The notes under the pieces: model-generated
Told to the model about the DNA's origin: nothing
Seen by the model: the letters and a program-made list of their open reading frames with translations, nothing else
Database searches by the model: none
Origin: Aplysia californica
Lineage: Eukaryota
Direction of reading: 5' to 3'
Length of the DNA: 64,000 nt
Assembly (NCBI RefSeq): GCF_000002075.1
Contig: NW_004797685.1
Location: 115,492 to 179,491, forward strand
Position numbers and translations under genes: made by a program
In this document: in pieces, positions 2,855 through 54,520 of the stretch
How positions within the stretch are numbered: the first letter of the stretch is position 1
Layout: each line of letters starts with the position of its first letter

Positions 2855-3669
2855 TTACTCCTTGTTCAAAAATGTTTTCATGAACACTGCTCGATATTTC
2901 GAACTCATTTTCAGATATACAAATATGTTCACGCTTGAGTTGACAGTTTCTGCTAGGTATGATGAAGACCAAATGACAAGATAGAGATTAGGATAGGCAC
3001 CATCAATACGGAAATTTGTGTCAAACAGCATATAGAAAAACAGGATCGTAGGAGGTAAGGAACACACGATGAAAATGACGGCAATGAAGGTCACCATCTT
3101 GACAACCTTTTGATCCTTGACCCCAACTCCTTCCGCTGCACGGTCACCCTTGGCAACAGTTGCCTGCCGCCATTTTGTTTTACTATTGAGTTTGACGACA
3201 AGCACGATGGTACAGCAGATGACGAAGACGAAAGAAAGCGTCGTAGTAAATACGCCTTGGGTGAGATACGTAATGGCTTCCAGCAGTTCTCTCTCGGCCG
3301 TGTACGTAGTTTTTAATACAGTAGCATTCACGGTGAAATCGAAAACCCATTCAAGTCTGCTTCCAAGGCAGAAGGGAATAAGTAAAATGGACATGGTGAT
3401 GTAGATGGAGATAATGATTATCTTTGTCCTTACAGGTGTAATGATCGTCTTCACCTTCAGAGGGGCAGCGATACACAGACATCGCTCGAAGGTGATAAAG
3501 GCGGTGATAAAAGTCGCGATTTTGACAAAGAGGTAATGGGGCATGGCTCCTGTGAGGTGCATGATATCTCTGGGTTCAAAGGGTAACTTAGAGAGGTAAA
3601 ACAGAGGGTTCACGCAAATGCTTATCCATATCATGGTCACCAGGGAGCACAGGTCAGACAGAGCGAGCC
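2855..3669 (-). CDS. Chemosensory-type GPCR gene 1, exon 2 (TM2-TM7, short C-tail)
   Basis: Acceptor TTTCAG|GG restores Gly and gives GLALSDL (TM2 LAxxD); FERC at end of TM3; NSSVNIFVY in TM7; open to TAA at 2855. Confidence 0.92.
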
Positions 3670-3831
3670 CTGAAATGATAAACAGTTCTAGGGATGGAAA
3701 AATGCAATACATAATTTTGACCCCCCCCCCCCCCCCGCTTTTTCCCTTGCAGGTTGGATAGCATGGCTGTGGAAACCTTCTGACATGAAAAGAGGCAAAC
3801 TAAGTTTGAATTTTTTTTTTTAAATTTCAGT

Positions 3832-4470: not shown

Positions 4471-4913
4471 TTTGGTTTGCAAATTCTTAGCAACAGCTAA
4501 CCTTTATGTCTGGAGGCATTTCCCCAATCCACCAACCGCGGAGCGCTGGGTTGGGTGTGAAGACCCAGTACTGTTTCAGTAAATTGTGTGTAATCAAGTT
4601 TAATAAGACGATATATATTTTTTGTTAACCTGCTTTTCAACTTGCTACATTAACCCGCTTACGAAGATCCCAACATACCTACCAAAGTACTGTCTACCTG
4701 CTTATGTCCCCTCGTTACTTTTTTTAGCCCGATAAATTCATAGGCTAAAACTAACCTTAACAAAGACTGTTCCCAAGATTTCGTAACTGCACGGTGACAT
4801 TAAATACGGTTCCAGTAAGGAACGGGAGAAGGGGTGCCACGTCCCTCATGACTCATTGGAGCTGAGGAAGATAGGACTGACGCGTACATTACATACACAC
4901 CATCATACATCAT

Positions 4914-5813
4914 TCACCGTTCCTCTTCATATTGGCAATCGACTGGCTGATGAAGGAAACCACCAGACGACACAAAAATGGTATACAGTGGACACCATGG
5001 ACACAGTTGGACGATCTGGATTTTGCAGACGACTTGGCGCTCTGTCGCACACCCAGGAACAGATGCAAGCAACGACTTCAGTATTAAACAGCCTATCGGA
5101 GTCTGTTGGATTGAGGATCCACCCCGGAAAGTCAAAAGTCCTAAGGACAGATGCACAACAAAAGGAGCAGGTCACAATAGAAGGAAAGGCCCTAGAAAAC
5201 GTTGAATCCTTCTGCTATCTTGGGAGCATAATTGACAGAGAGGGAGGAACAGGTGCTGAAATTAAGTCCCGCATTGGAAAAGCACAGGCTGCTTTCATAT
5301 CTTTGGATAGGATTTGGAAGACCGGAGATATCTCACTTCGAACAAAGCTGGGGATTTTCAACTCAAACGTGAAGTCGGTCCCGTTGTATGGATGTGAGGC
5401 ATGGAACGCATCACAGACTTGTGTAAAGAGAATCCAGGTTTTCTTGAACAGGTGTCTAAGAAAGTTACTGAGGATCAGATGGACAGACAGGGTTACCAAT
5501 GTGGAAGTGTTAAGGAAAACAAGATAGATCCCAGTCAGAGATGAGACAGGAAGAAGGCGGTGGCGATGGATTGGACATACTCTCAGGAAGTCAGACAGCT
5601 GCATAACAAAGAAAGTTTTGGATTGGAACCCACAGGGCAAGAGATCAAGGGGAAGACCTCGTGGAACCTGGAGAAGAATCACAGAAATCGATGTACAGAA
5701 AAGTGGGAAGACATGGAACAACATCAAGAGGCTAGCCCAGGATAGAGAAAAGTGGAGGGTGGTTGTCCGTGGCCTATTCCCTGGTGCAGGGTGAGAAAGG
5801 CAATGACGATGAT
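4914..5813 (+). mobile_element. Young 5'-truncated RTE-clade LINE in the gene 1 intron
   Basis: SPFLFILAIDW..DLDFADDL..FCYLGS..LYGCEAW..WRWIGHTLRK..RGRPRGTW, with one frameshift and one stop; 13-bp TSD CATCATA(C/G)ATCAT at 4901-4913 and 5814-5826. Confidence 0.88.
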
Positions 5814-8360: not shown

Positions 8361-8721
8361 ACCATTTGACAATGAGAATGACAATCTTTATTCATCTCAC
8401 AGAGAGGAATTTGTCTTGGTCGTTTACAGTGGCAGCGGACGATACAAAGGTAAGGTACACTCACGCATACGTACAACAAAACAGGACATTGGTAAATACA
8501 TATAGTCTGCATGTTTTACGAGCTGAAACAACCCCNNNNNNNNNNNNNNNNNNNNNNNNNNNNNNNNNNNNNNNNNNNNNNNNNNNNNNNNNNNNNNNNN
8601 NNNNNNNNNNNNNNNNNNNNNNNNNNNNNNNNNNNNNNNNNNNNNNNNNNNNNNNNNNNNNNNNNNNNNNNNNNNNNNNNNNNNNNNNNNNNNNNNNNNN
8701 NNNNNNNNNNNNNNNNNNNCG

Positions 8722-11445
8722 TTGATATATAAAGAGACCCACTACCCCGTCTGTAGGAGGTGAAACCTCCCCAATGACGAAGTGCCGCACACGCACCCCC
8801 TACCCTCTAGGATTCGGTTGCGACACCTAGATCTACTTTGGTGTATCATTCTCTTCTCCTTCCTTCTTTCTATTTCTATCTTTTCTTACACGCCAACCTC
8901 ATGTGGAGCCCCCCCCCCCCCCCCAGTGGGTCGGGGAGATATAAATAGACCCACTGCTTCGTCTGCAGAAGGTGCAACCCCTTCAAAGGCGGAGGGTCGC
9001 ACAAGGACCCCAACCCTCTGGGATCCGTGTGCGACACTCACTTTGGTGTATCTTCCTCTTCTCCTTCCTTCCTTCTTTCTTTCTTCTTCTATCTTTCCTA
9101 CCACCGCTGACCTCATGTGCAGCAAAAAGAGAGGTCACCCATCCCACAGAGTGGGCGCCTCGTTGACCATGAGGTGCGACCCGTGCGGAGGACTGTCCCT
9201 CGCCAACACACCTCTTTGGCCCTGGTTTTCCTCTTAGACGGGAGGGTGGCACGGCATGCCACTCAATCGGTTGAGAGCTGAAACCCCATCAAGCCCTGGG
9301 TCAATCTTGACGGGAGGCTCTCGTACTTTCTCGTTGAGAGTATAGCTCCGGGGTAGCCCTGGCACAGCTCTGGTTATCCGAGCTATGTGTCCCCTTGTTG
9401 GGCTCTGTGGCGGGCAGGGAGCCCCGGAGTCGAATCAAATAGAAAACTCTTATGGATTCAAAAAACCCAAAAGACCCTTCCCCAGCTCCCAACGTAAAGA
9501 AGTCTCGGCTCGCGGAAGCCGGTGCGGCCGCCGAGCCGAGCAAAAGCTCAAAAAAAGGTAAAAGGACCTTTACCGATGCCTCTTTCCTCCCTCCTCCCAA
9601 GGAGCTTCTGAGGCAACCGTACGTGGCCATCTCCAGTACCAAAGACGCACAGAGAAGAATTACCGATCTCAACCTCTTTAAGACGGGAGATGCACTACGG
9701 AAAGTTCTGGGATACATTCCCACATGTGTACAGAAACTTTCCTGTGGTACACTCCTTGTCAAGTGTGCAACCGAGATCGAAGTGACCAAACTCCTGGATA
9801 CCACGACCTTCGGCGGTATTCAATGTAAGTCAGAGCACTACCAAAAATTTAACCGCTCGAAGGGTGTGGTCCGCAGCCATGAGCATGGAAGAGATTGTGG
9901 AGCACTGTGAGGGAGTGGTCGAAGCCCCCCCGGATTACTCTTCGGCGGGGGGAGACTACTATCGAGACGAACACGATTGTCCTAACATTCGAATCGTGTC
10001 GCCCTCCAGCCACCATTCGGGCATCTTACTTGATACTCGACGTAAGACCCTATGTGCCGAACCCTCTGCGCTGTTTCAAGTGTCAGAAGTTCGGCCATAC
10101 CAGTCACGGTGCCGTCACGCAGCCGTGTGTCCTCGTTGTGGCAAGACCGGGCATCCTGAGAAGGAATGCAAGGCTAGTCCTTGTTGCCCCAATTGCCACG
10201 GCCAGCACACAGCTTTCAGCAAGGAGTGCCCGACTTGGCTCCAAGAACGCGCCATCCAAGAATACAAGGCGCGAAATGGCTGCTCCTTCCAAGAGGCCCG
10301 TAAGGTTGTCTGCCCGCCAATCACAACCCCAGTCATTGGCCGGTCATATTCAAAGGCAACCCAGATGGTCACGAGGTCGGCAAGTAATTCTACTGCCGAC
10401 CTCCCAAAGCCTGCGGTCAACAGGCAAGTCTCTGCGCCAAAGATCACCAAAAATAAAAAGCCCGCTACTATCCCTGTGCCCCTTTGAGGTGCCACTCTCT
10501 AACAGCTATGGGGTTCTAGGGGAGGACGGGGAGGACTCTTCCTCCGCCCCCTCTTCTCCCCCTCACCCCTCTTCTATCATTTCTTCTTCTTCTTCTTCTT
10601 CCACCTCTCAGCCCATCCCTCTGATGGAGTGTGAGGTGGGGGCCTTCTCCCCTCCCCCAGCCCCCTTCCCCCCTTCCCAGCCCCCTCGGTCTACTCCACC
10701 TCCCCCTACCCCTCCAGCAGACAAACCCCTGCCTATGGAGGAAGACAGCTCCGACCCCCCTCCCCGGCCTGACCCGGGGAGGGGCGGAGTCTGTCACTCT
10801 TCCAAATCCCCCACTAGACCGCCGTCCAATCCAGGACGGCAACCTAGAAAACACTCTGCCTCCCCCGTAAGGAGGAGTCAGAGTGCTTCTTCGAAGCCGG
10901 GGCCTTTGAGCTCCAAACAAAAACCTAAAAAATCATAATGGCGGTCCTGCAATGGAATGCCGGCGGAATCCGACCTTCCATTGCAGAATTGCAACATTTA
11001 CAGGCCACACTGTGCCCACGGGTGGCCTGTATTCAAGAAACAAAATTCGCCCCGGCTTCAACCATAGACTTAAGAGGATTTACTGCGTACCATCACATTC
11101 ACACGCAGAACCAGATTGCTTCCGGTGGTACCACCATCTACACCGACAACCACACACTCCACAGACAAGTACATCTTAAGACGACCCTCCAGGCTATTGC
11201 CGTACGGGTCACCCTGCACAGACCAATCATGATCTGCTCAGTTTACATCCCACCAACTTACCCCCTCAAAATAACCCAACTAAATGACTTAAAATCTCAG
11301 CTCCCAAAACTTTTTATTTTGCTAGGTGATTTAGTTAGCCAGTCGTGAAGTGAACTTTCGCAGAGGTGAACAACTTGTGTTTCGCGCGCTCATATGACCT
11401 TAGCAGTTGCGAGCGCCGTAAAACCTTATACTATACTTATACTAC
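8722..11445 (+). mobile_element. I/Nimb-like LINE: GC-rich 5'UTR, frameshifted ORF1 (~9452-10938), start of ORF2 APE (10938-11333), then 3' tail
   Basis: RPYVPNPLRCFKCQKFGH, CPRCGKTGH and CPNCHGQH zinc knuckles; MAVLQWN..CIQETK..CSVYIPP..LLGD endonuclease; ORF1 stop overlaps the ORF2 ATG (TAATG). Confidence 0.88.
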
Positions 11446-11448
11446 TTA

Positions 11449-11765
11449 CTTCATGTGGAGCAAAACTAGAGGTCAACCATCCCTCAGAGTGGGTGCCTCG
11501 TTGACCGTGAGGTGCGACCCGTGCGGAGGGAAACCGGGTACCTGGAGGTTGAGGTGAGATCAGTCTGCAGACTGTCCCTCGCCGACACACTTCTTTGGTC
11601 CAGGTTCCCCTTAGTCGGGAGGGTGGCACGGCCCAAGCCACTCTATCGGTTGGGAGCTGGAACCCGTTATTGCCATGGGTCAATCTTGACGGGAGGGTCT
11701 TGTACACTCTCGTGGAGAGTATAACTCCGGGTAGCCCTGGCACAGCTCCGGCTATCCGAGCAATG
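11449..11765 (+). mobile_element. Second copy of the same LINE 5'UTR directly after the 3' tail
   Basis: Collinear with 9110-9385. Confidence 0.8.
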
Positions 11766-36216: not shown

Positions 36217-36229
36217 GTGGGGGAGGGGG

Positions 36230-36885
36230 CGTGTGTTTGTCATCCATTGGTTTTATGACATTTGTTCATCTCCAAGGGCTCCCCATCCATCACCGCGTCC
36301 AACAAGAGGACACCGCTCGGAAGTCCACAGCTGGTGTCAGGGCTACCCTGAAGGTATACTGCCAATCAGACGTCAAGAAAGCCTTCCTTCTAACCACGAT
36401 TGACTAAAAACCAGTGTTACGAACCAGTCATAACCGATTGAGTATAGTAGGCCACTACAACGACCGTCTAGATCGAATCCAGGGCCAAAGAGGCGTGTTG
36501 GTGAAGGAAGCCACATATCAGCCACCAGGATCCTCTTCTCCGGTCGTACGGGTCGCACCCTTCCGTCAACAGGGTGCCTCACGTTGTGAGGGTTCGGGGT
36601 TTATTTTTTACTTGACCGGACCTTCAGTCGTCAGATTGGAAAGAGAGGTAGATGGACAAAAGATGCCACTCAACGTCAGAGAGCTAGTGGTATACGAGTG
36701 GCATCCCATCAGAAGGGGGGAATGGCAACCCCTTTTGATGGGATAGCTGACTGTCACCTCCGGGAAAGATGAAAGAAGGAGGAAAAAAAGAAGACAGAAG
36801 ACAGTAAATGTCGCCAATGCGCATCTCAGTGCTGATGTTCATGGTGCCAGCTCTGGTGTATGTGTCTTTGTGTGTGTTTTTTCTG
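36230..36885 (-). mobile_element. Older I/Nimb-like LINE 5'UTR remnant, downstream of gene 3
   Basis: Collinear with 14210-14805 and 53035-53313. Confidence 0.75.
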
Positions 36886-37176: not shown

Positions 37177-37997
37177 CTATTTTTCCTGCTTGTTCAAAAA
37201 TGTTTTTATAAAGACTGCTCGGTATTTTGAACTCATTTTCAAATACACAAATATGTTCACGCTGGAGTTGACAGTTTCTGTTAGGAATGATAAACACCAT
37301 ATTGTAGAATAGAGATTGGGATAGGCACCATCAATACGGAAATTTGTGTCAAACAGCATATAGAAAAACAGGAGCGTCGGAGGTACGGCGCTGACGATGA
37401 AAATGACAGCAATGAAGGTCACCATTTTGACAACCTTTTGATCCTTGACCCCAACTCCTTCCGCTGCTCGGTCACCTTTGGCTGCAGTGGCCTGCCGCCA
37501 TTTTGTTTTACTATTGAGTTTGACGACAAGCACGATGGTACAGCAGATGACGAAGACGAAAGAAAGCGTCGTAGTAAATACGCCTTGGGTGAGATACGTA
37601 ATGGCTTCTAGCATTTCTCTCTCGGCCGTGAAGGTGGTTTTTAATACAGTAGCATTCAAGGTGAAATCGAAAACCCATTCAAGTCTGTGTCCAAGGCAGA
37701 AGGGAATAAGCAAAATGGACATGGTGATGTAGATGGAGATAATGATCATCTTTGTTCTTACCGGTGTGATGACCATCTTCACCTTCAGAGGGGCAGCGAT
37801 ACACAAACATCGCTCGAAGGTGATAAAGGCGGTGATAAAAGTGGCAATTTTGACAAAGAGGTAACGGGGCATTGATCCTGTAAGGTACATAATATCTCTG
37901 GGGTCAAAGGGCAGCTCAGAGAGGTAAAACAGTGGGTTCACGCAGATGCTTAGCCATATCGTTGTCACCAGGGAGCACAGGTCAGACACAGCGAGCC
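37177..37997 (-). CDS. Chemosensory-type GPCR gene 3, exon 2
   Basis: TTTCAG|GG acceptor; 821 nt intact frame ending NKQEK-TAG. Confidence 0.92.
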
Positions 37998-51688: not shown

Positions 51689-53313
51689 GGCTGGTGGAAA
51701 GTTCGCGGTTCTATAATCGTCATCATCATCACCATCATCATCATCGTTATCATCATAATGTCATTTAGTGTTAAATGAACTGCATTCAATATCACTGTAT
51801 TCGTATCCTAACAAGAAAAAATACATACACACAATGTGGACTTTGTTACGTTTGTCCCAAATGGAAGTTCTAACGTACACTGATGATATGAGCGCATCAG
51901 TGTCCATGTTTGAATCATTTGCTACATCAAACTGTAGGCTTAAGTAGTTCCACTGCTTGGGTACAGCGGTAACGTGAAAACAAGGCCACAGACAGCTTTG
52001 GGCGACCTTGGAAAGAACGTAGTTTGGATTCCACGAGAAACGTCAGTGCCGCTCCTCACTGGCGCGTCCTCAATGACAGCAGGCAGCTTTATGTATGTGG
52101 GACGCAACGGTTTTCATTAGGGGATCCTTTTCATCTCATTGCCTCGGGCAGTGCGCTTACGTGAGCGTGAGTGAACGACTTTCTCTATGTGGTCGCCCTT
52201 AGCCTGGGCAAAAGTATCTGCGAACTTTGCTCGGTGGGTCAAGATGGTCTTTTCATGTGAATATTTGGAAAAGTTCTTTGAATTTGCTGAATGTTCTCCT
52301 TGCTGACAATTTGGGAACCGGGGAACTGACGAGCAGGATTCCTCTGAGTGACCCTCCTTACCACAGTGAGGGAAAACATAATTTCGCCCGCATTTTAGTT
52401 TTTTATGTCCGAAGTGCTGACAATTAAAGCAACACACCAGGTTTGGTATATACAATTTAACCTCGAGTTCTACGTGTTCAAGGGACAGTTTTGTCGAAGG
52501 TCTTGGACAATCAAAAACTAATGTCCAAATGTTGGTGTGGATTTCCTTTCCATCTTGCCACACTATGACAGAACGAGAGTGGGTGACACCTTCCGTACAG
52601 CAGTCCAGGTCACGCTTCTTTACAACATCCCTGGAAGTATTGAGACTCCTATGAGGCTCAACATTTACAGGGTTGCCCTCGAATGACCTACATTTCCGTA
52701 TCAAAAAGAAGTCGGCCACGTTGGCAAGATCCGCAAAGAAGTCACAAGACCCATGAGGGGAGACTTTCTTTGGTCTTGAGATGCTGCGTGCTCTAAATGC
52801 TTGACCTGTGGCAAAGACGCTTAGCAATGTTACTGTTTTTTGTTAGTTCAGCTGAGGAGATCACCAGGTAAGATGACCATCCTAGCGTCGTCCGTTTAGG
52901 TAGGTCCCAGACGCTCATATTTTCTCCCCTAAGTTTTTTTTTCGTTTAACCTGGCCAGGATTCGCACTCATTCCTCCTGAAAAATACTTGCTGGGAACTG
53001 GGGGGTGTGTTTTTCTTGGGGGGGGGGGGGGGGGGTATTTGTTATCCATAGGTTTTATCACATTTGTTCATCTCCAGGGGTCCCCACCCGCCACCACGTC
53101 CAAAAAGGGGACACCGCTCGGACCTGGTGTCAGGGCAACCCTGGAGGTATACTCCCAATCAGACGGCAAGAAATCTTGCCTTATAACGGAGATTGACCAA
53201 AGACCAGTTTTACGAACCGGTCATAACCGATTGAGTGTAGTAGGCCACTACACATATCTGTCTAGATCGAATCCAGGGCTAAAGTGGCATGTTGGTGAAG
53301 GAAATCACACCTT
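51025..53313 (-). mobile_element. Older I/Nimb-like LINE 5'UTR plus ORF1 remnant, downstream of gene 4
   Basis: ORF 52117-52827: VEPHRSLNTSR..YIPNLVCCFNCQHFGH..CGKEGH..PNCQQGEHSA; interrupted by simple repeats at ~51600-51900. Confidence 0.8.
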
Positions 53314-53717: not shown

Positions 53718-54520
53718 TCAAAAATGTTTTAAAAACACTGCTCGGTATTTCGAACTCATTTGCAGATACACAAATATGTTCACGCTAGAGTTGACAGTTT
53801 CTGTTAGGAATGATGAAGACCAAATGACAGAATAGAGATTCGGATAGGCGCCATCAACTCGGAAATCTGAGTCAAACAGCATATAGAAAAACAGGAGCGT
53901 AGAAGGTAAGGAACAGACGATGAAAATGACAGCAATGAAGGTCACCATTTTGACAACCTTTTGATCCTTGACCCCAACTCCTGCCGCTGCACGGTCACCC
54001 TTGACAGCAGTAGCCTGCCGCCATTTTGTTTTACTATTGAGTTTGACGACAAGCACGATGGTACAGCAGATGACGAAGACGAAAGAAAGCGTCGTAGTAA
54101 ATACGCCTTGGGTGAGATACGTAATGGCTTCCAGCAGTTCTCTCTCGGCCGTGTACGTAGTTTTTAATACAGTAGCATTCACCGTGAAATCGAAAACCCA
54201 CTCAAGTCTGTTTCCAAGGCAGAAGGGAATAAGTAAAATCGACATGGTGATGTAGATGGAGATAATGATTATCTTTGTTCTTACCGGTGTGATGATCGCC
54301 TTCACCTTCAGAGGAACAGCGATACACAAACATCGCTCGAAGGTGATAAAGGCGGTGATGAAAGTGGAGATTTTGACAAAGAGGTAACGAGGTATGGCTC
54401 CTGTAGGGAGCATGATATTCCTGGGGTCAAAGGGCAGCTCAGAGAGGTAGAACAGCGGGTTCACGCAGATGCTTATCCACATCATGGCCACCAGAGAGCA
54501 CAGGTCAGACACAGAGAGCC
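53718..54520 (-). CDS. Chemosensory-type GPCR gene 4, exon 2 (1-nt deletion shortens the C-tail)
   Basis: TTTCAG|GG acceptor; TM2-TM7 intact; ends FLKHF-TGA; adding one A near 53728 restores KTFLNQQEK-TAG at 53701, matching gene 3. Confidence 0.88.

What the first reader, a model, noticed from the sequence alone, without database searches (positions are those of the whole stretch)
9130..9430. Candidate conserved structured RNA in the 5'UTR of two divergent I/Nimb-like LINE families
Seen: the young LINE UTR (9130-9430, again at 11460-11765) and the older minus-strand family (14240-14520, 36265-36590, 53070-53310) have divergent ORF1s but keep collinear UTR blocks with covarying helices. Helix A has a 7-bp stem and 9-nt loop in both: GCGCCTC-gttgaccat-GAGGTGC (9155-9177) vs GCACCCT-gttgacgga-AGGGTGC (36577-36555), two fully compensatory pairs, shared GTTGAC loop, then GACCCGT. 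Helix B: GTGGCA/TGCCAC vs GTGTAG/CTACAC, then AATCGGTT. Closing helix C: CTCCGGGG/CCCCGGAG (9346-9353, 9422-9429) vs CTCCAGGG/CCCTGGAG (53146-53139, 53079-53072), enclosing GGCACA/TGTGTC vs GACACC/GGTGTC and ending ~22 nt before the ORF1 ATG. Inference: selection on RNA structure, such as a translation-initiation element, an ORF1p binding or packaging signal, or a ribozyme. HDV-like ribozymes are known at the 5' ends of R2, RTE and L1Tc/ingi elements, but I could not recognise an HDV or hammerhead core here. Whether this is already described needs a search.
Basis: partly seen in the sequence, partly recalled or inferred. Interest (0 to 1): 0.75.

Follow-up and report, generated by a model that had tools for sequence, protein, structure and literature searches.

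The report
Conserved folded leader of snail LINEs
The flagged stretch is part of a long non-coding leader that several related jumping-gene (LINE) lineages in this mollusc genome keep far better than their first protein gene, probably because the RNA must fold, although what the fold does is still unknown.

Summary
The interval is the downstream two thirds of a longer 5' leader. The element starts at about 8920, not 9130. The three "older" copies are probably one old insertion, copied along with a receptor gene.

Genome-wide, the leader occurs in at least three lineages (F1, F2, F3). F1 and F2 leaders are about 74% identical over 553 aligned columns. Their ORF1 proteins are only about 40% identical, and the ORF1 DNA is almost unalignable.

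Between F1 and F2, 17 proposed base pairs changed on both sides and still pair. Twelve more alternate between G·U and Watson-Crick pairs, which points to the sense RNA. Column-shuffle nulls do not reach these counts.

Three results weaken the case:
- Folding-energy z-scores are no better than in ORF1 controls.
- Effectively only two lineages are informative.
- F3 breaks 11 of the 18 pairs it changes.

No Rfam family matches, and that includes every ribozyme family.

My best reading is a selected, bipartite leader RNA. It has a duplicable 5' module and a multi-helix domain that ends 22 nt before the ORF1 AUG. That domain most plausibly serves non-scanning translation or RNP assembly. Interest is moderate: this looks like a new RNA family of a known general kind.

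The parts
8724..8909 (+). Extra, diverged tandem copy of the 5' module ('monomer 1'). It begins right after an assembly gap.
   Evidence: About 75% identical to 8919-9123. Aligned.
8910..8924 (+). Run of C at the junction of the two 5' modules. The last five C are the normal start of the element.
8920..9123 (+). 5' module of the F1 leader. It contains an invariant 9-bp hairpin (8924-8932 / 8948-8956) with a GGGG..ATATAAATA loop, helix H2, and the long hairpin H3 (about 8996-9035).
   Evidence: Homology of 29 of 30 loci starts here. The terminus is sharp. H2 and H3 carry compensatory pairs at A1 columns 53/76, 90/120, 92/118, 93/117 and 102/109.
9124..9429 (+). It holds helix A (9155-9177), the long-range helix CCCGT 9180-9184 / ACGGG 9238-9242, helix B (9244-9264) and closing helix C (9346-9353 / 9422-9429) with its internal hairpins. 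The window copy lacks about 40 nt of the long-range arm.
9430..9451 (+). A-rich spacer, predicted unpaired, between the closing helix and the ORF1 start codon.
   Evidence: Its composition, but not its sequence, is shared with F2.
9452..10937 (+). ORF1 of the window copy, frameshifted here. It is intact (about 493-503 aa) in other copies.
10938..11348 (+). Start of ORF2 (N-terminus of the endonuclease). The element is cut off here.
   Evidence: Weak Exo_endo_phos match, E 0.005, below the Pfam cut-off.
11445..11765 (+). Second F1-type leader fragment. It starts about 10 nt before the end of the 5' module and is cut off inside the closing domain.
14199..14805 (-). Old F2-type leader fragment with an internal deletion, followed by the start of a diverged ORF1.
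36219..36859 (-). Old F2-type leader fragment, running into a microsatellite.
53021..53312 (-). Old F2-type leader fragment, cut by an assembly gap at its 5' side.

Best explanation
The interval is the core of a non-coding 5' leader, about 570 nt long in F1 and about 730 nt in F2. Several lineages of one LINE group in this genome share it.

The leader has two parts.
1. A 5' module of about 200 nt. It begins at a sharply defined terminus (A)CCCCCAGTGGGTC and contains an invariant hairpin with a TATA-like, A-rich loop. Occasionally it occurs in tandem. I infer that it acts as the promoter and 5'-end module.
2. A domain of about 340-380 nt. It contains helix A, a long-range arm, helix B and a closed three-way region. 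It ends 22 nt before the ORF1 AUG and is followed by an A-rich unpaired spacer.

Shown: the sense-strand RNA fold of this leader has been kept between the F1 and F2 lineages by compensatory and wobble substitutions, while ORF1 diverged almost beyond alignment.

Inferred: the fold works in cis on the element's own RNA. The most plausible role is to bring ribosomes to the ORF1 AUG without scanning through 4-6 upstream AUGs and about -155 kcal/mol of structure (IRES- or shunt-like). Alternatively, or in addition, it nucleates the ORF1p/ORF2p particle. The confidence figure is for 'selected cis-acting leader RNA fold'. The translation mechanism alone I put at about 0.3.
For: - Collinear homology across the whole leader. 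53 copies were aligned: 29 of 30 F1 loci and 24 of 30 F2 loci. There are 147 differences in 553 ungapped columns.
- ORF1p of F1 and F2 is 38-42% identical, and only 120 nt of ORF1 DNA align.
- Within F1, leaders differ by about 3-6%. ORF1 windows differ by 10-30% and ORF1p is 71% identical.
- For a 121-pair structure, 98.3% of 6349 cells pair. 18 pairs changed on both sides (388 cells), against 1-9 pairs (1-43 cells) when partners are slid.
- With the structure predicted from one family alone, pairs changed on both sides in the other family were kept/broken 7/2 and 11/7 (3' domain), and 6/1 and 6/1 (5' module).
- Column-shuffle nulls: 12 compensatory pairs against 5.2 expected (0 of 150 shuffles) in the 3' domain. 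Stems of 7 bp or more with a double change: 8 against 1.5 (0 of 200).
- Twelve family-level G·U to Watson-Crick alternations occur. The consensus energy is better on the sense strand than on the antisense strand in the 3' domain.
- Among 100 listed genomic copies of helix A, the wobble class is common and the C·A class rare: 21 against 0 at pair 447/460, and 32 against 3 at pair 448/459 (my count).
- Stepwise series C-G, U·G, U-A are seen at pairs 578/590 and 448/459.
- Single-sequence MFE folds of F1 and F2 independently recover helix A, the CCCGU/ACGGG arm, helix B and the closing helix.
- There are 4 (F1) and 6 (F2) upstream ATGs. None is conserved, and indels are not multiples of three.
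- Contigs of runs that are guessed to be RNA hold both the leader and ORF1.
Against: - Only two lineages carry the signal, so each compensatory pair is a single event.
- The test structure was derived from the same two consensus sequences.
- A global RNAalifold run on the full alignment gave a partly different fold.
- Energy z-scores are not specific. The leader gives -2.96 (F1) and -5.22 (F2). Two ORF1 windows give -4.10 and -3.63. ORF1 windows also give column-shuffle z of -1.8 to -6.4.
- ORF1 controls show some excess of compensatory pairs too: 15 against 10.1 expected, compared with 17 against 5.9 in the leader. One ORF1 chunk rich in simple sequence also exceeds its shuffles.
- With strictly ungapped stems, only helix B has more than one double change.
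- The third lineage, F3, makes up about 20% of intact copies. It shows 7 kept and 11 broken pairs among the 18 it changed, with no compensatory double change. It has a G·G mismatch inside helix B in all 9 F3-type rows seen, and a TTG where ORF1 starts.
- Paired columns are more conserved than unpaired ones (82% against 63%). The opposite pattern is the classic signature of a covarying RNA.
- Clustered compensatory changes, as in helix B, can arise in one template-switch mutation without selection. This point is recalled from the literature, not tested.
- Nothing here bears directly on translation or protein binding.
- The RNA status of the runs is a guess, and contigs show no transcript ends.
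Confidence: 0.55

Rival explanations
1. The leader is conserved mainly as DNA, as an internal Pol II promoter or regulatory region with transcription-factor sites. The helices are incidental, or come from shared ancestry plus template-switch mutations in inverted repeats.
For: - LINE 5' UTRs are known to carry internal promoters (recalled; the L1Tc Pr77 abstract is in the listing).
- The 5' module occurs in tandem in at least two copies, as promoter monomers do.
- Paired columns are simply the best-conserved columns.
- The thermodynamic signal is not specific to the leader.
- F3 amplified in spite of broken pairs.
Against: - A promoter does not predict 17 double changes that all restore pairing, nor 12 G·U alternations confined to the sense strand.
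- It does not predict the near absence of the C·A class in helix A among 100 copies.
- Stems kept with compensation exceed the shuffles.
Confidence: 0.2
2. The fold is a binding or assembly platform for the element's own proteins. It would serve cis-preference, packaging, or the 5'-end step of integration, as the 5' RNA of R2 does, rather than translation.
For: - The same structural evidence as for the main reading.
- The loop of helix A (GTTGACCGT) and the block CAATCGGTTG are invariant between F1 and F2. They could pair with each other over 6-7 bp (seen by eye).
- The 5' ends are uniform.
- Head-to-tail junctions at the exact terminus occur in L009, L026 and L034.
- Precedent: an R2 protein binds a pseudoknotted RNA of its element (abstract of PMC12222951, listed). 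That 5' RNA governs R2's second-strand step is recalled.
Against: - ORF1p differs by 60% between F1 and F2 while the leader is kept. A co-evolving RNA-protein pair would be expected to drift together.
- There are no data on binding.
- The invariant blocks cannot be tested by covariation.
Confidence: 0.15
3. The leader contains a self-cleaving ribozyme that frees the element RNA from read-through transcripts.
For: - The 5' terminus is sharp and uniform in 41 of 46 copies.
- Ribozymes are known at LINE 5' ends: R2, L1Tc, and twister variants in Perere-3 (abstracts listed; outline).
- Contigs run from the terminus into unrelated flanks (table 7).
Against: - No match to any Rfam ribozyme family at E<=10 in F1 (window copy and a near-consensus copy) or in F2.
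- The first 45 nt form a simple hairpin, or an H-type pseudoknot, whose strand order does not fit the HDV P1-P2-P3 order (by eye).
Confidence: 0.04
4. No function. The leader looks conserved because it was recently exchanged between lineages by recombination or template switching, and the apparent covariation is chance.
For: - The leader is mosaic relative to ORF1. F2 leaders 85-94% alike are attached to bodies that are 86% or 67-72% alike.
- F1 leaders about 3% apart are attached to ORF1s 10-30% apart.
- F3 behaves neutrally.
- ORF1 controls also give some signal.
Against: - Exchange explains the identity but not why the 147 differences avoid breaking stems.
- 0 of 200 and 0 of 150 shuffles reach the observed counts.
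- Repeated retention of one leader across lineages itself suggests it is advantageous.
Confidence: 0.1

Closest known systems
Mouse L1 5' UTR: tandem promoter monomers followed by a non-monomeric 'tether' before ORF1 (recalled, no paper read here)
   Same: A 5' module of about 200 nt can occur in tandem. It is followed by a unique region that abuts ORF1.
   Different: Tandem modules were seen in only 2-3 copies. The unique region here is long (about 350 nt) and shows compensatory base-pair changes. There is no sequence relation.
R2 5' RNA: an HDV-like ribozyme plus a pseudoknotted RNA bound by the R2 protein (abstracts of PMC3774820 and PMC12222951, seen in the listing)
   Same: A structured cis-acting RNA at the 5' side of a non-LTR element, conserved by structure more than by sequence.
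   Different: There is no HDV-like match. The element is not rDNA-specific and has two ORFs. Protein binding was not tested.
L1Tc/ingi Pr77: 77 nt shared by otherwise different elements, acting as both promoter and HDV-like ribozyme (abstracts of PMC3383444 and PMC3185411; discussed in PMC4758252 section 10, read)
   Same: A 5'-terminal cassette shared by lineages whose coding parts differ. A dual DNA/RNA role is conceivable.
   Different: Here the whole 570-730 nt is shared, not just the first 77 nt. No ribozyme signature was found.
The ~70-bp 5'-terminal domain shared by Nimb LINEs (locust, zebrafish), a turtle RTE and mollusc 'LP-SINEs' (PMC4758252, section 10 read)
   Same: It is found in molluscs and in Nimb-type LINEs, at the extreme 5' end. 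It is conserved across unrelated bodies and was proposed to be a promoter.
   Different: That paper reports that the roughly 300 nt following the domain are NOT conserved between Nimb families, whereas here they are. The sequences are only in figures and supplements that I could not see, so I could not test whether that domain is the same as our 5' module.
Twister-variant ribozymes at the 5' end of Perere-3 in Schistosoma (PMC8501958, abstract and outline read)
   Same: A lophotrochozoan LINE with a functional RNA at its 5' end that permits translation of the downstream ORF.
   Different: There is no twister match in Rfam. Nothing suggests that a target-site duplication contributes a P1 strand here.

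Membership tests
HDV-like self-cleaving ribozymes of LINEs | Match to the covariance models for the nested double-pseudoknot fold (HDV, CPEB3 and drz families in Rfam) | tested here: not met
   No such family at the gathering score in the window. None at E<=10 in window 8700-9600, L019 1300-1950 or L033 1150-1950.
HDV-like self-cleaving ribozymes of LINEs | The ribozyme begins at the first nucleotide of the element, so cleavage defines the 5' end | tested here: not met
The first 45 nt form a plain 9-bp hairpin whose strand order does not fit P1-P2-P3-P1 (by eye).
HDV-like self-cleaving ribozymes of LINEs | Self-cleavage activity | not testable with these tools
   This needs in vitro transcription and cleavage assays.
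Hammerhead, twister, twister-sister, hatchet, pistol and other Rfam ribozymes | Match to the family covariance model | tested here: not met
   The listed matches are miRNA, sRNA and lncRNA models far below their gathering scores. Divergent variants such as the Schistosoma T-variants might escape these models.
Monomer/tether-type LINE 5' UTR (mouse L1-like organisation) | A 5' unit of about 200 nt repeated head to tail upstream of a unique region | tested here: inconclusive
   Two units are present in the window copy (8724-8909 and 8920-9123). Two units lie about 300 nt apart on another contig. Most copies have a single unit.
Nimb / LP-SINE conserved 5' terminal domain (Matetovici et al. 2016) | Sequence homology to the first ~70 bp of Nimb-17_LMi, I-3_DR and the LP-SINE heads | not testable with these tools
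   The sequences are not in the text read. Supplements are closed and Repbase is not available. Pattern scans of viral and metagenome contigs gave 0 hits and 1 chance hit.
   No RT or RNase H sequence of this element is in the window or in the loci held. The only evidence is a weak Exo_endo_phos hit and cysteine-rich knuckles in ORF1 (by eye).
IRES-like or shunting leaders | Cap-independent or non-scanning initiation at the downstream AUG | not testable with these tools
   The evidence is circumstantial only: 4-6 non-conserved upstream ATGs, an MFE of -154 to -158 kcal/mol for about 330 nt, and an A-rich unpaired spacer before the AUG.
Structured RNA under selection (general criterion) | Statistically supported covariation across many independent lineages | tested here: inconclusive
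   F1 versus F2 is positive. Only about 2 informative lineages exist. F3 is negative. The ORF1 controls are partly positive.

The most novel reading that the evidence does not exclude
The leader is a previously undescribed, roughly 550-nt modular RNA 'cassette'. It is passed between LINE lineages that have very different ORF1 genes. Its 3' domain would be a retrotransposon IRES or ribosome-landing structure of a new architecture. Its invariant 5' terminus (C5 run, G6 run, A-rich loop and a 7-9 bp stem that can be drawn as an H-type pseudoknot) would be a 5'-end definition or protection element. That terminus might be the same deeply conserved head seen in Nimb LINEs and LP-SINEs across phyla.
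Probability: 0.2. Interest if true: 0.7.

Novelty: new member of a known kind. Interest (0 to 1): 0.45.

Why it matters
LINE 5' UTRs are usually the fastest-changing part of the element and are frequently replaced. Here the opposite holds: the leader is retained while ORF1 diverges or is swapped. If the fold is functional, it would give a tractable example of a cis-acting leader RNA in a two-ORF LINE outside mammals and insects. It would open the question of how ORF1 is translated behind a long, AUG-studded, structured leader. It would also offer a possible link to the unexplained 5' head shared by Nimb LINEs and mollusc LP-SINEs. If it is only a promoter, the finding is an ordinary, if unusually well-kept, LINE 5' UTR.

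Tried and rejected
Rfam. I searched at gathering scores on the whole window and at E<=10 on three leaders. Nothing relevant came up.

Older copies as further lineages. L061 and L064 looked like extra lineages, but their nearest relatives are ordinary F1 copies at about 80% identity. They are decayed singletons.

Cross-species homologues. Exact-pattern scans of viral contigs found nothing. On reading it was a chance match in unrelated sequence, and I did not use it.

Energy z-scores. I first took column-shuffle z-scores of -4 to -6 as evidence. ORF1 controls and dinucleotide-shuffle folds showed that the whole element scores like that, so I dropped the argument.

Global RNAalifold on the 826-column alignment. 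It gave a partly different long-range fold, so I used segment-wise folds instead. I treat the long-range pairs as uncertain.

Extra 5' module at 8724-8909. I examined it as a third lineage. It adds G-C at one H2 pair and U-A at another, but it is too decayed elsewhere to count.

Reads. All runs were kept as contigs and their RNA status was only guessed. They gave no transcript starts. They showed only that leader and ORF1 words of F1, and F2-type sequence at loose contig ends, are present in small assemblies, including runs labelled as two other organisms.

The search of earlier findings by place returned nothing.

Literature. Four full-text searches found no description of this leader. I read section 10 and passages of PMC4758252, and the abstract and outline of PMC8501958. 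For all other papers I saw only the listing and the start of the abstract. The figures and supplements of PMC4758252, which hold the LP-SINE and Nimb head sequences, could not be seen and may bear on the 5' module.
Full report
WHAT IS THERE

The closing helix ends 22 nt before an ATG at 9452. That ATG opens a LINE ORF1, and ORF2 (endonuclease N-terminus) follows at 10938.

The interval is not the whole leader. I fetched 30 genomic copies using window 9100-9460 as the query (557 first-look candidates, 40 scored). In 29 of them, homology to the window starts at 8911-8924. 46 fetched F1 or F2 copies contain the 5' hairpin. In 41 of these (25 of 28 F1, 16 of 18 F2) it is preceded by ACCCC and then by unrelated flanking DNA. 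The element therefore begins (A)CCCCCAGTGGGTC at about 8920.

Window 8724-8909 is an extra copy of the first ~200 nt, about 75% identical, joined through a run of 15 C. Another contig also carries two such modules close together.

The window copy lacks about 40 nt that the other copies carry in the long-range arm.

LINEAGES

The minus-strand "older family" (125 candidates) is a true LINE lineage, which I call F2. It has its own ORF1 and ORF2 start. Its leader is homologous to the F1 leader from the first nucleotide to the ATG, with an insertion of about 190 nt after the 5' module.

The three window copies of F2 lie at the same relative position, 3' of three paralogous 7TM-receptor genes that are 87-90% identical. 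They are most likely one old insertion multiplied by segmental duplication. They differ from each other by 17-31%, so they are poor witnesses of selection.

For that reason I worked from 53 genomic copies: 29 of 30 F1 loci and 24 of 30 F2 loci. The rows left out were truncated, or were the window's own copy.

A pattern search over helix A then revealed a third lineage, F3, in 19-21 of the 100 rows listed. In the helix B search it appears in 9 of the 44 rows that were shown.

CONSERVATION

F1 and F2 leaders differ at 147 of 553 ungapped columns. Their ORF1 proteins are 38-42% identical, and only 120 nt of ORF1 DNA align at all.

Within F1, leaders are about 3-6% apart, while ORF1 windows differ by 10-30% and ORF1p is 71% identical. 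Within F2, leaders 85-94% alike sit on bodies that are 86% or 67-72% alike.

So the leader is either much more constrained than ORF1 or is exchanged between lineages. Either way it is retained.

It is non-coding. There are 4 (F1) and 6 (F2) upstream ATGs, none of them conserved, and the indels are not multiples of three.

IS THERE A CONSERVED RNA FOLD?

Evidence for:
1. I predicted the structure from one family only and scored it in the other. Pairs that changed on both sides were kept/broken 7/2 and 11/7 in the 3' domain, and 6/1 and 6/1 in the 5' module.
2. A segment-wise consensus structure has 121 pairs. On the tool alignment, 98.3% of 6349 cells pair and 18 pairs changed on both sides (388 cells). 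Slid controls gave 1-9 pairs (1-43 cells). By my reading of that table, 17 pairs are family-level compensatory changes and 12 alternate between G·U and Watson-Crick. The latter fits the sense strand only.
3. Column shuffles that keep the conservation pattern gave 12 compensatory pairs against 5.2 expected (0 of 150) for the 3' domain. For the 5' module they gave 5 against 1.6 (7 of 300).
4. I enumerated all ungapped stems kept in both families, without using a folding program. Stems of 7 bp or more with a double change numbered 8 against 1.5 expected (0 of 200). Stems of 8 bp or more numbered 5 against 0.5 (0 of 200).
5. Among 100 listed genomic copies of helix A, I counted the following. Pair 447/460: U-A 64, U·G 21, C-G 15, C·A 0. 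Pair 448/459: C-G 62, U·G 32, U-A 3, C·A 3. Neutral transitions should give the U·G and C·A classes equally. These are subfamily variants, though, so they represent perhaps four independent events.
6. The stepwise series C-G, U·G, U-A occur at pairs 578/590 and 448/459.
7. Independent MFE folds of one F1 copy and one F2 copy recover the same architecture.

Evidence against, or limiting:
1. Energy z-scores are not specific. With dinucleotide shuffles the leader scores -2.96 (F1) and -5.22 (F2), and two ORF1 windows score -4.10 and -3.63. Column-shuffle z in ORF1 windows ranges from -1.8 to -6.4.
2. ORF1 controls also show some excess of compensatory pairs: 15 against 10.1 expected, compared with 17 against 5.9 in the leader. 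One ORF1 chunk rich in simple sequence exceeds its shuffles.
3. With strictly ungapped stems, only helix B has more than one double change.
4. The tool's global RNAalifold run gave a partly different fold.
5. In F3 (two copies, 77-78% identical to F1), 18 of the proposed pairs changed. 7 stay paired, 11 do not, and none is a compensatory double change. All 9 F3-type rows seen carry a G·G mismatch inside helix B. F3 also lacks about 55 nt of the 5' module and reads TTG where ORF1 starts. F3 may be a degenerate or trans-mobilised lineage. Taken at face value, though, it shows that copies can multiply with a damaged fold.
6. Paired columns are more conserved than unpaired ones (82% against 63% in the 3' domain).

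My weighing: a selected sense-strand fold is more likely than not, at about 0.55-0.65. It is not proven.

WHAT IT IS NOT

No Rfam family matches at gathering scores. No ribozyme family matches at E<=10 in three leaders. The interval lies about 210 nt inside the element, so a cleavage there would remove the 5' module that all full-length copies keep.

The first 45 nt form an invariant 9-bp hairpin with a G-rich and A/U-rich loop. It can also be drawn as an H-type pseudoknot, with the C5 run pairing with the G6 run. Because it never varies, this cannot be tested.

MECHANISM

Shown:
- The leader has a bipartite anatomy and a sharp terminus.
- It is retained while ORF1 diverges.
- Compensatory changes maintain the helices between F1 and F2.

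Inferred:
- The 5' module is the promoter and 5'-end module. The grounds are its position, its occasional tandem copies and its TATA-like motif.
- The 3' domain acts on the RNA. I favour non-scanning initiation at the ORF1 AUG. The grounds are a long leader of about -155 kcal/mol with 4-6 non-conserved upstream AUGs, and a closing helix followed by a 22-nt A-rich unpaired spacer in both families. Protein binding or RNP nucleation is the main alternative. A purely DNA-level promoter comes next.

EXPRESSION

Twenty runs from 6 studies hold at least half of the sampled words of a near-consensus copy. None is on record as RNA.

In four runs laid on the copy (contigs only), leader and ORF1 are both covered and the unique flank is not. 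F2-type sequence appears at loose contig ends. Some contigs run from the terminus into unrelated flanks. This cannot show a transcript start, a strand or an expression level. Two runs labelled as other organisms hold near-identical leader pieces. I did not pursue what they are.

COMPARISON WITH WHAT IS KNOWN

The organisation resembles the mouse L1 monomers plus tether (recalled). The idea of a structured 5' RNA resembles R2 and L1Tc Pr77 (abstracts).

The most relevant paper is Matetovici et al. 2016 (PMC4758252; section 10 read). It reports a 5'-terminal domain of about 70 bp shared by Nimb LINEs of locust and zebrafish, a turtle RTE and mollusc LP-SINEs. In those Nimb LINEs the following ~300 bp are not conserved between families. 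I could not compare sequences, because they are in figures and supplements that are not held here.

Four full-text searches found no description of the fold proposed here.

VERDICT

- This is a probable new cis-acting leader RNA of a LINE group, a new member of a known general kind.
- Its function is untested.
- The evidence is limited by the small number of informative lineages and by a non-supporting third lineage.

Noticed in passing
window 2855-3712, 15261-16169, 37177-37989, 53718-54512 (all minus strand): A tandem cluster of rhodopsin-type / Srw-like 7TM receptor paralogues, 87-92% identical in DNA. Three of them carry the same old LINE leader fragment about 300-400 nt beyond their 3' end, so the gene plus the fragment was duplicated as a unit.
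   Followed up: partly
window 8924-8956, and the same place in 46 fetched copies: An invariant 5'-terminal hairpin CAGTGGGTC / GACCCACTG whose loop reads GGGGGG-ATATAAATA, preceded by a C5 run. It can be drawn as an H-type pseudoknot with an A-rich third loop. The TATA-like motif lies about 20 nt INSIDE the element.
   Followed up: partly
L009, L026, L034; window 8900-8925; a second contig: Head-to-tail junctions in which a complete 5' terminus (ACCCCCAGTGGG) directly follows a partial leader or ORF sequence of another copy. This is consistent with end-to-end template jumping or tandem module gain.
   Followed up: no
L092, L093 (third lineage F3): Both copies read TTG where F1 and F2 have the ORF1 ATG. 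Both lack about 55 nt of the 5' module (helix H2 and half of H3). Even so, this haplotype makes up about a fifth of the copies seen in pattern searches.
   Followed up: partly
A1 columns 451-457 and 599-605 (window about 9164-9170 and 9268-9274): The invariant loop of helix A (UUGACCG) is complementary over 6-7 bp to the invariant block CGGUUGA just after helix B. This is a possible loop-to-strand tertiary contact. Neither side varies, so it cannot be tested by covariation.
   Followed up: no
L019:1324-2500, run X20 (table 2): In one run of unknown type, labelled as another organism, summed word depth over the leader is 100-1000 times that over ORF1. The assembly's first-look candidate counts are similar for the 5' module, the 3' domain and ORF1 (599, 557 and 446).
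   Followed up: no
window 4856-5527 (+): An ORF with a DUF6451 match (E 1.7e-12). It was not examined further.
   Followed up: no
L032:1-1506 (minus strand): The apparently intact 502-codon F2 ORF1 is an artefact. After 76 codons it runs into an assembly gap.
   Followed up: yes
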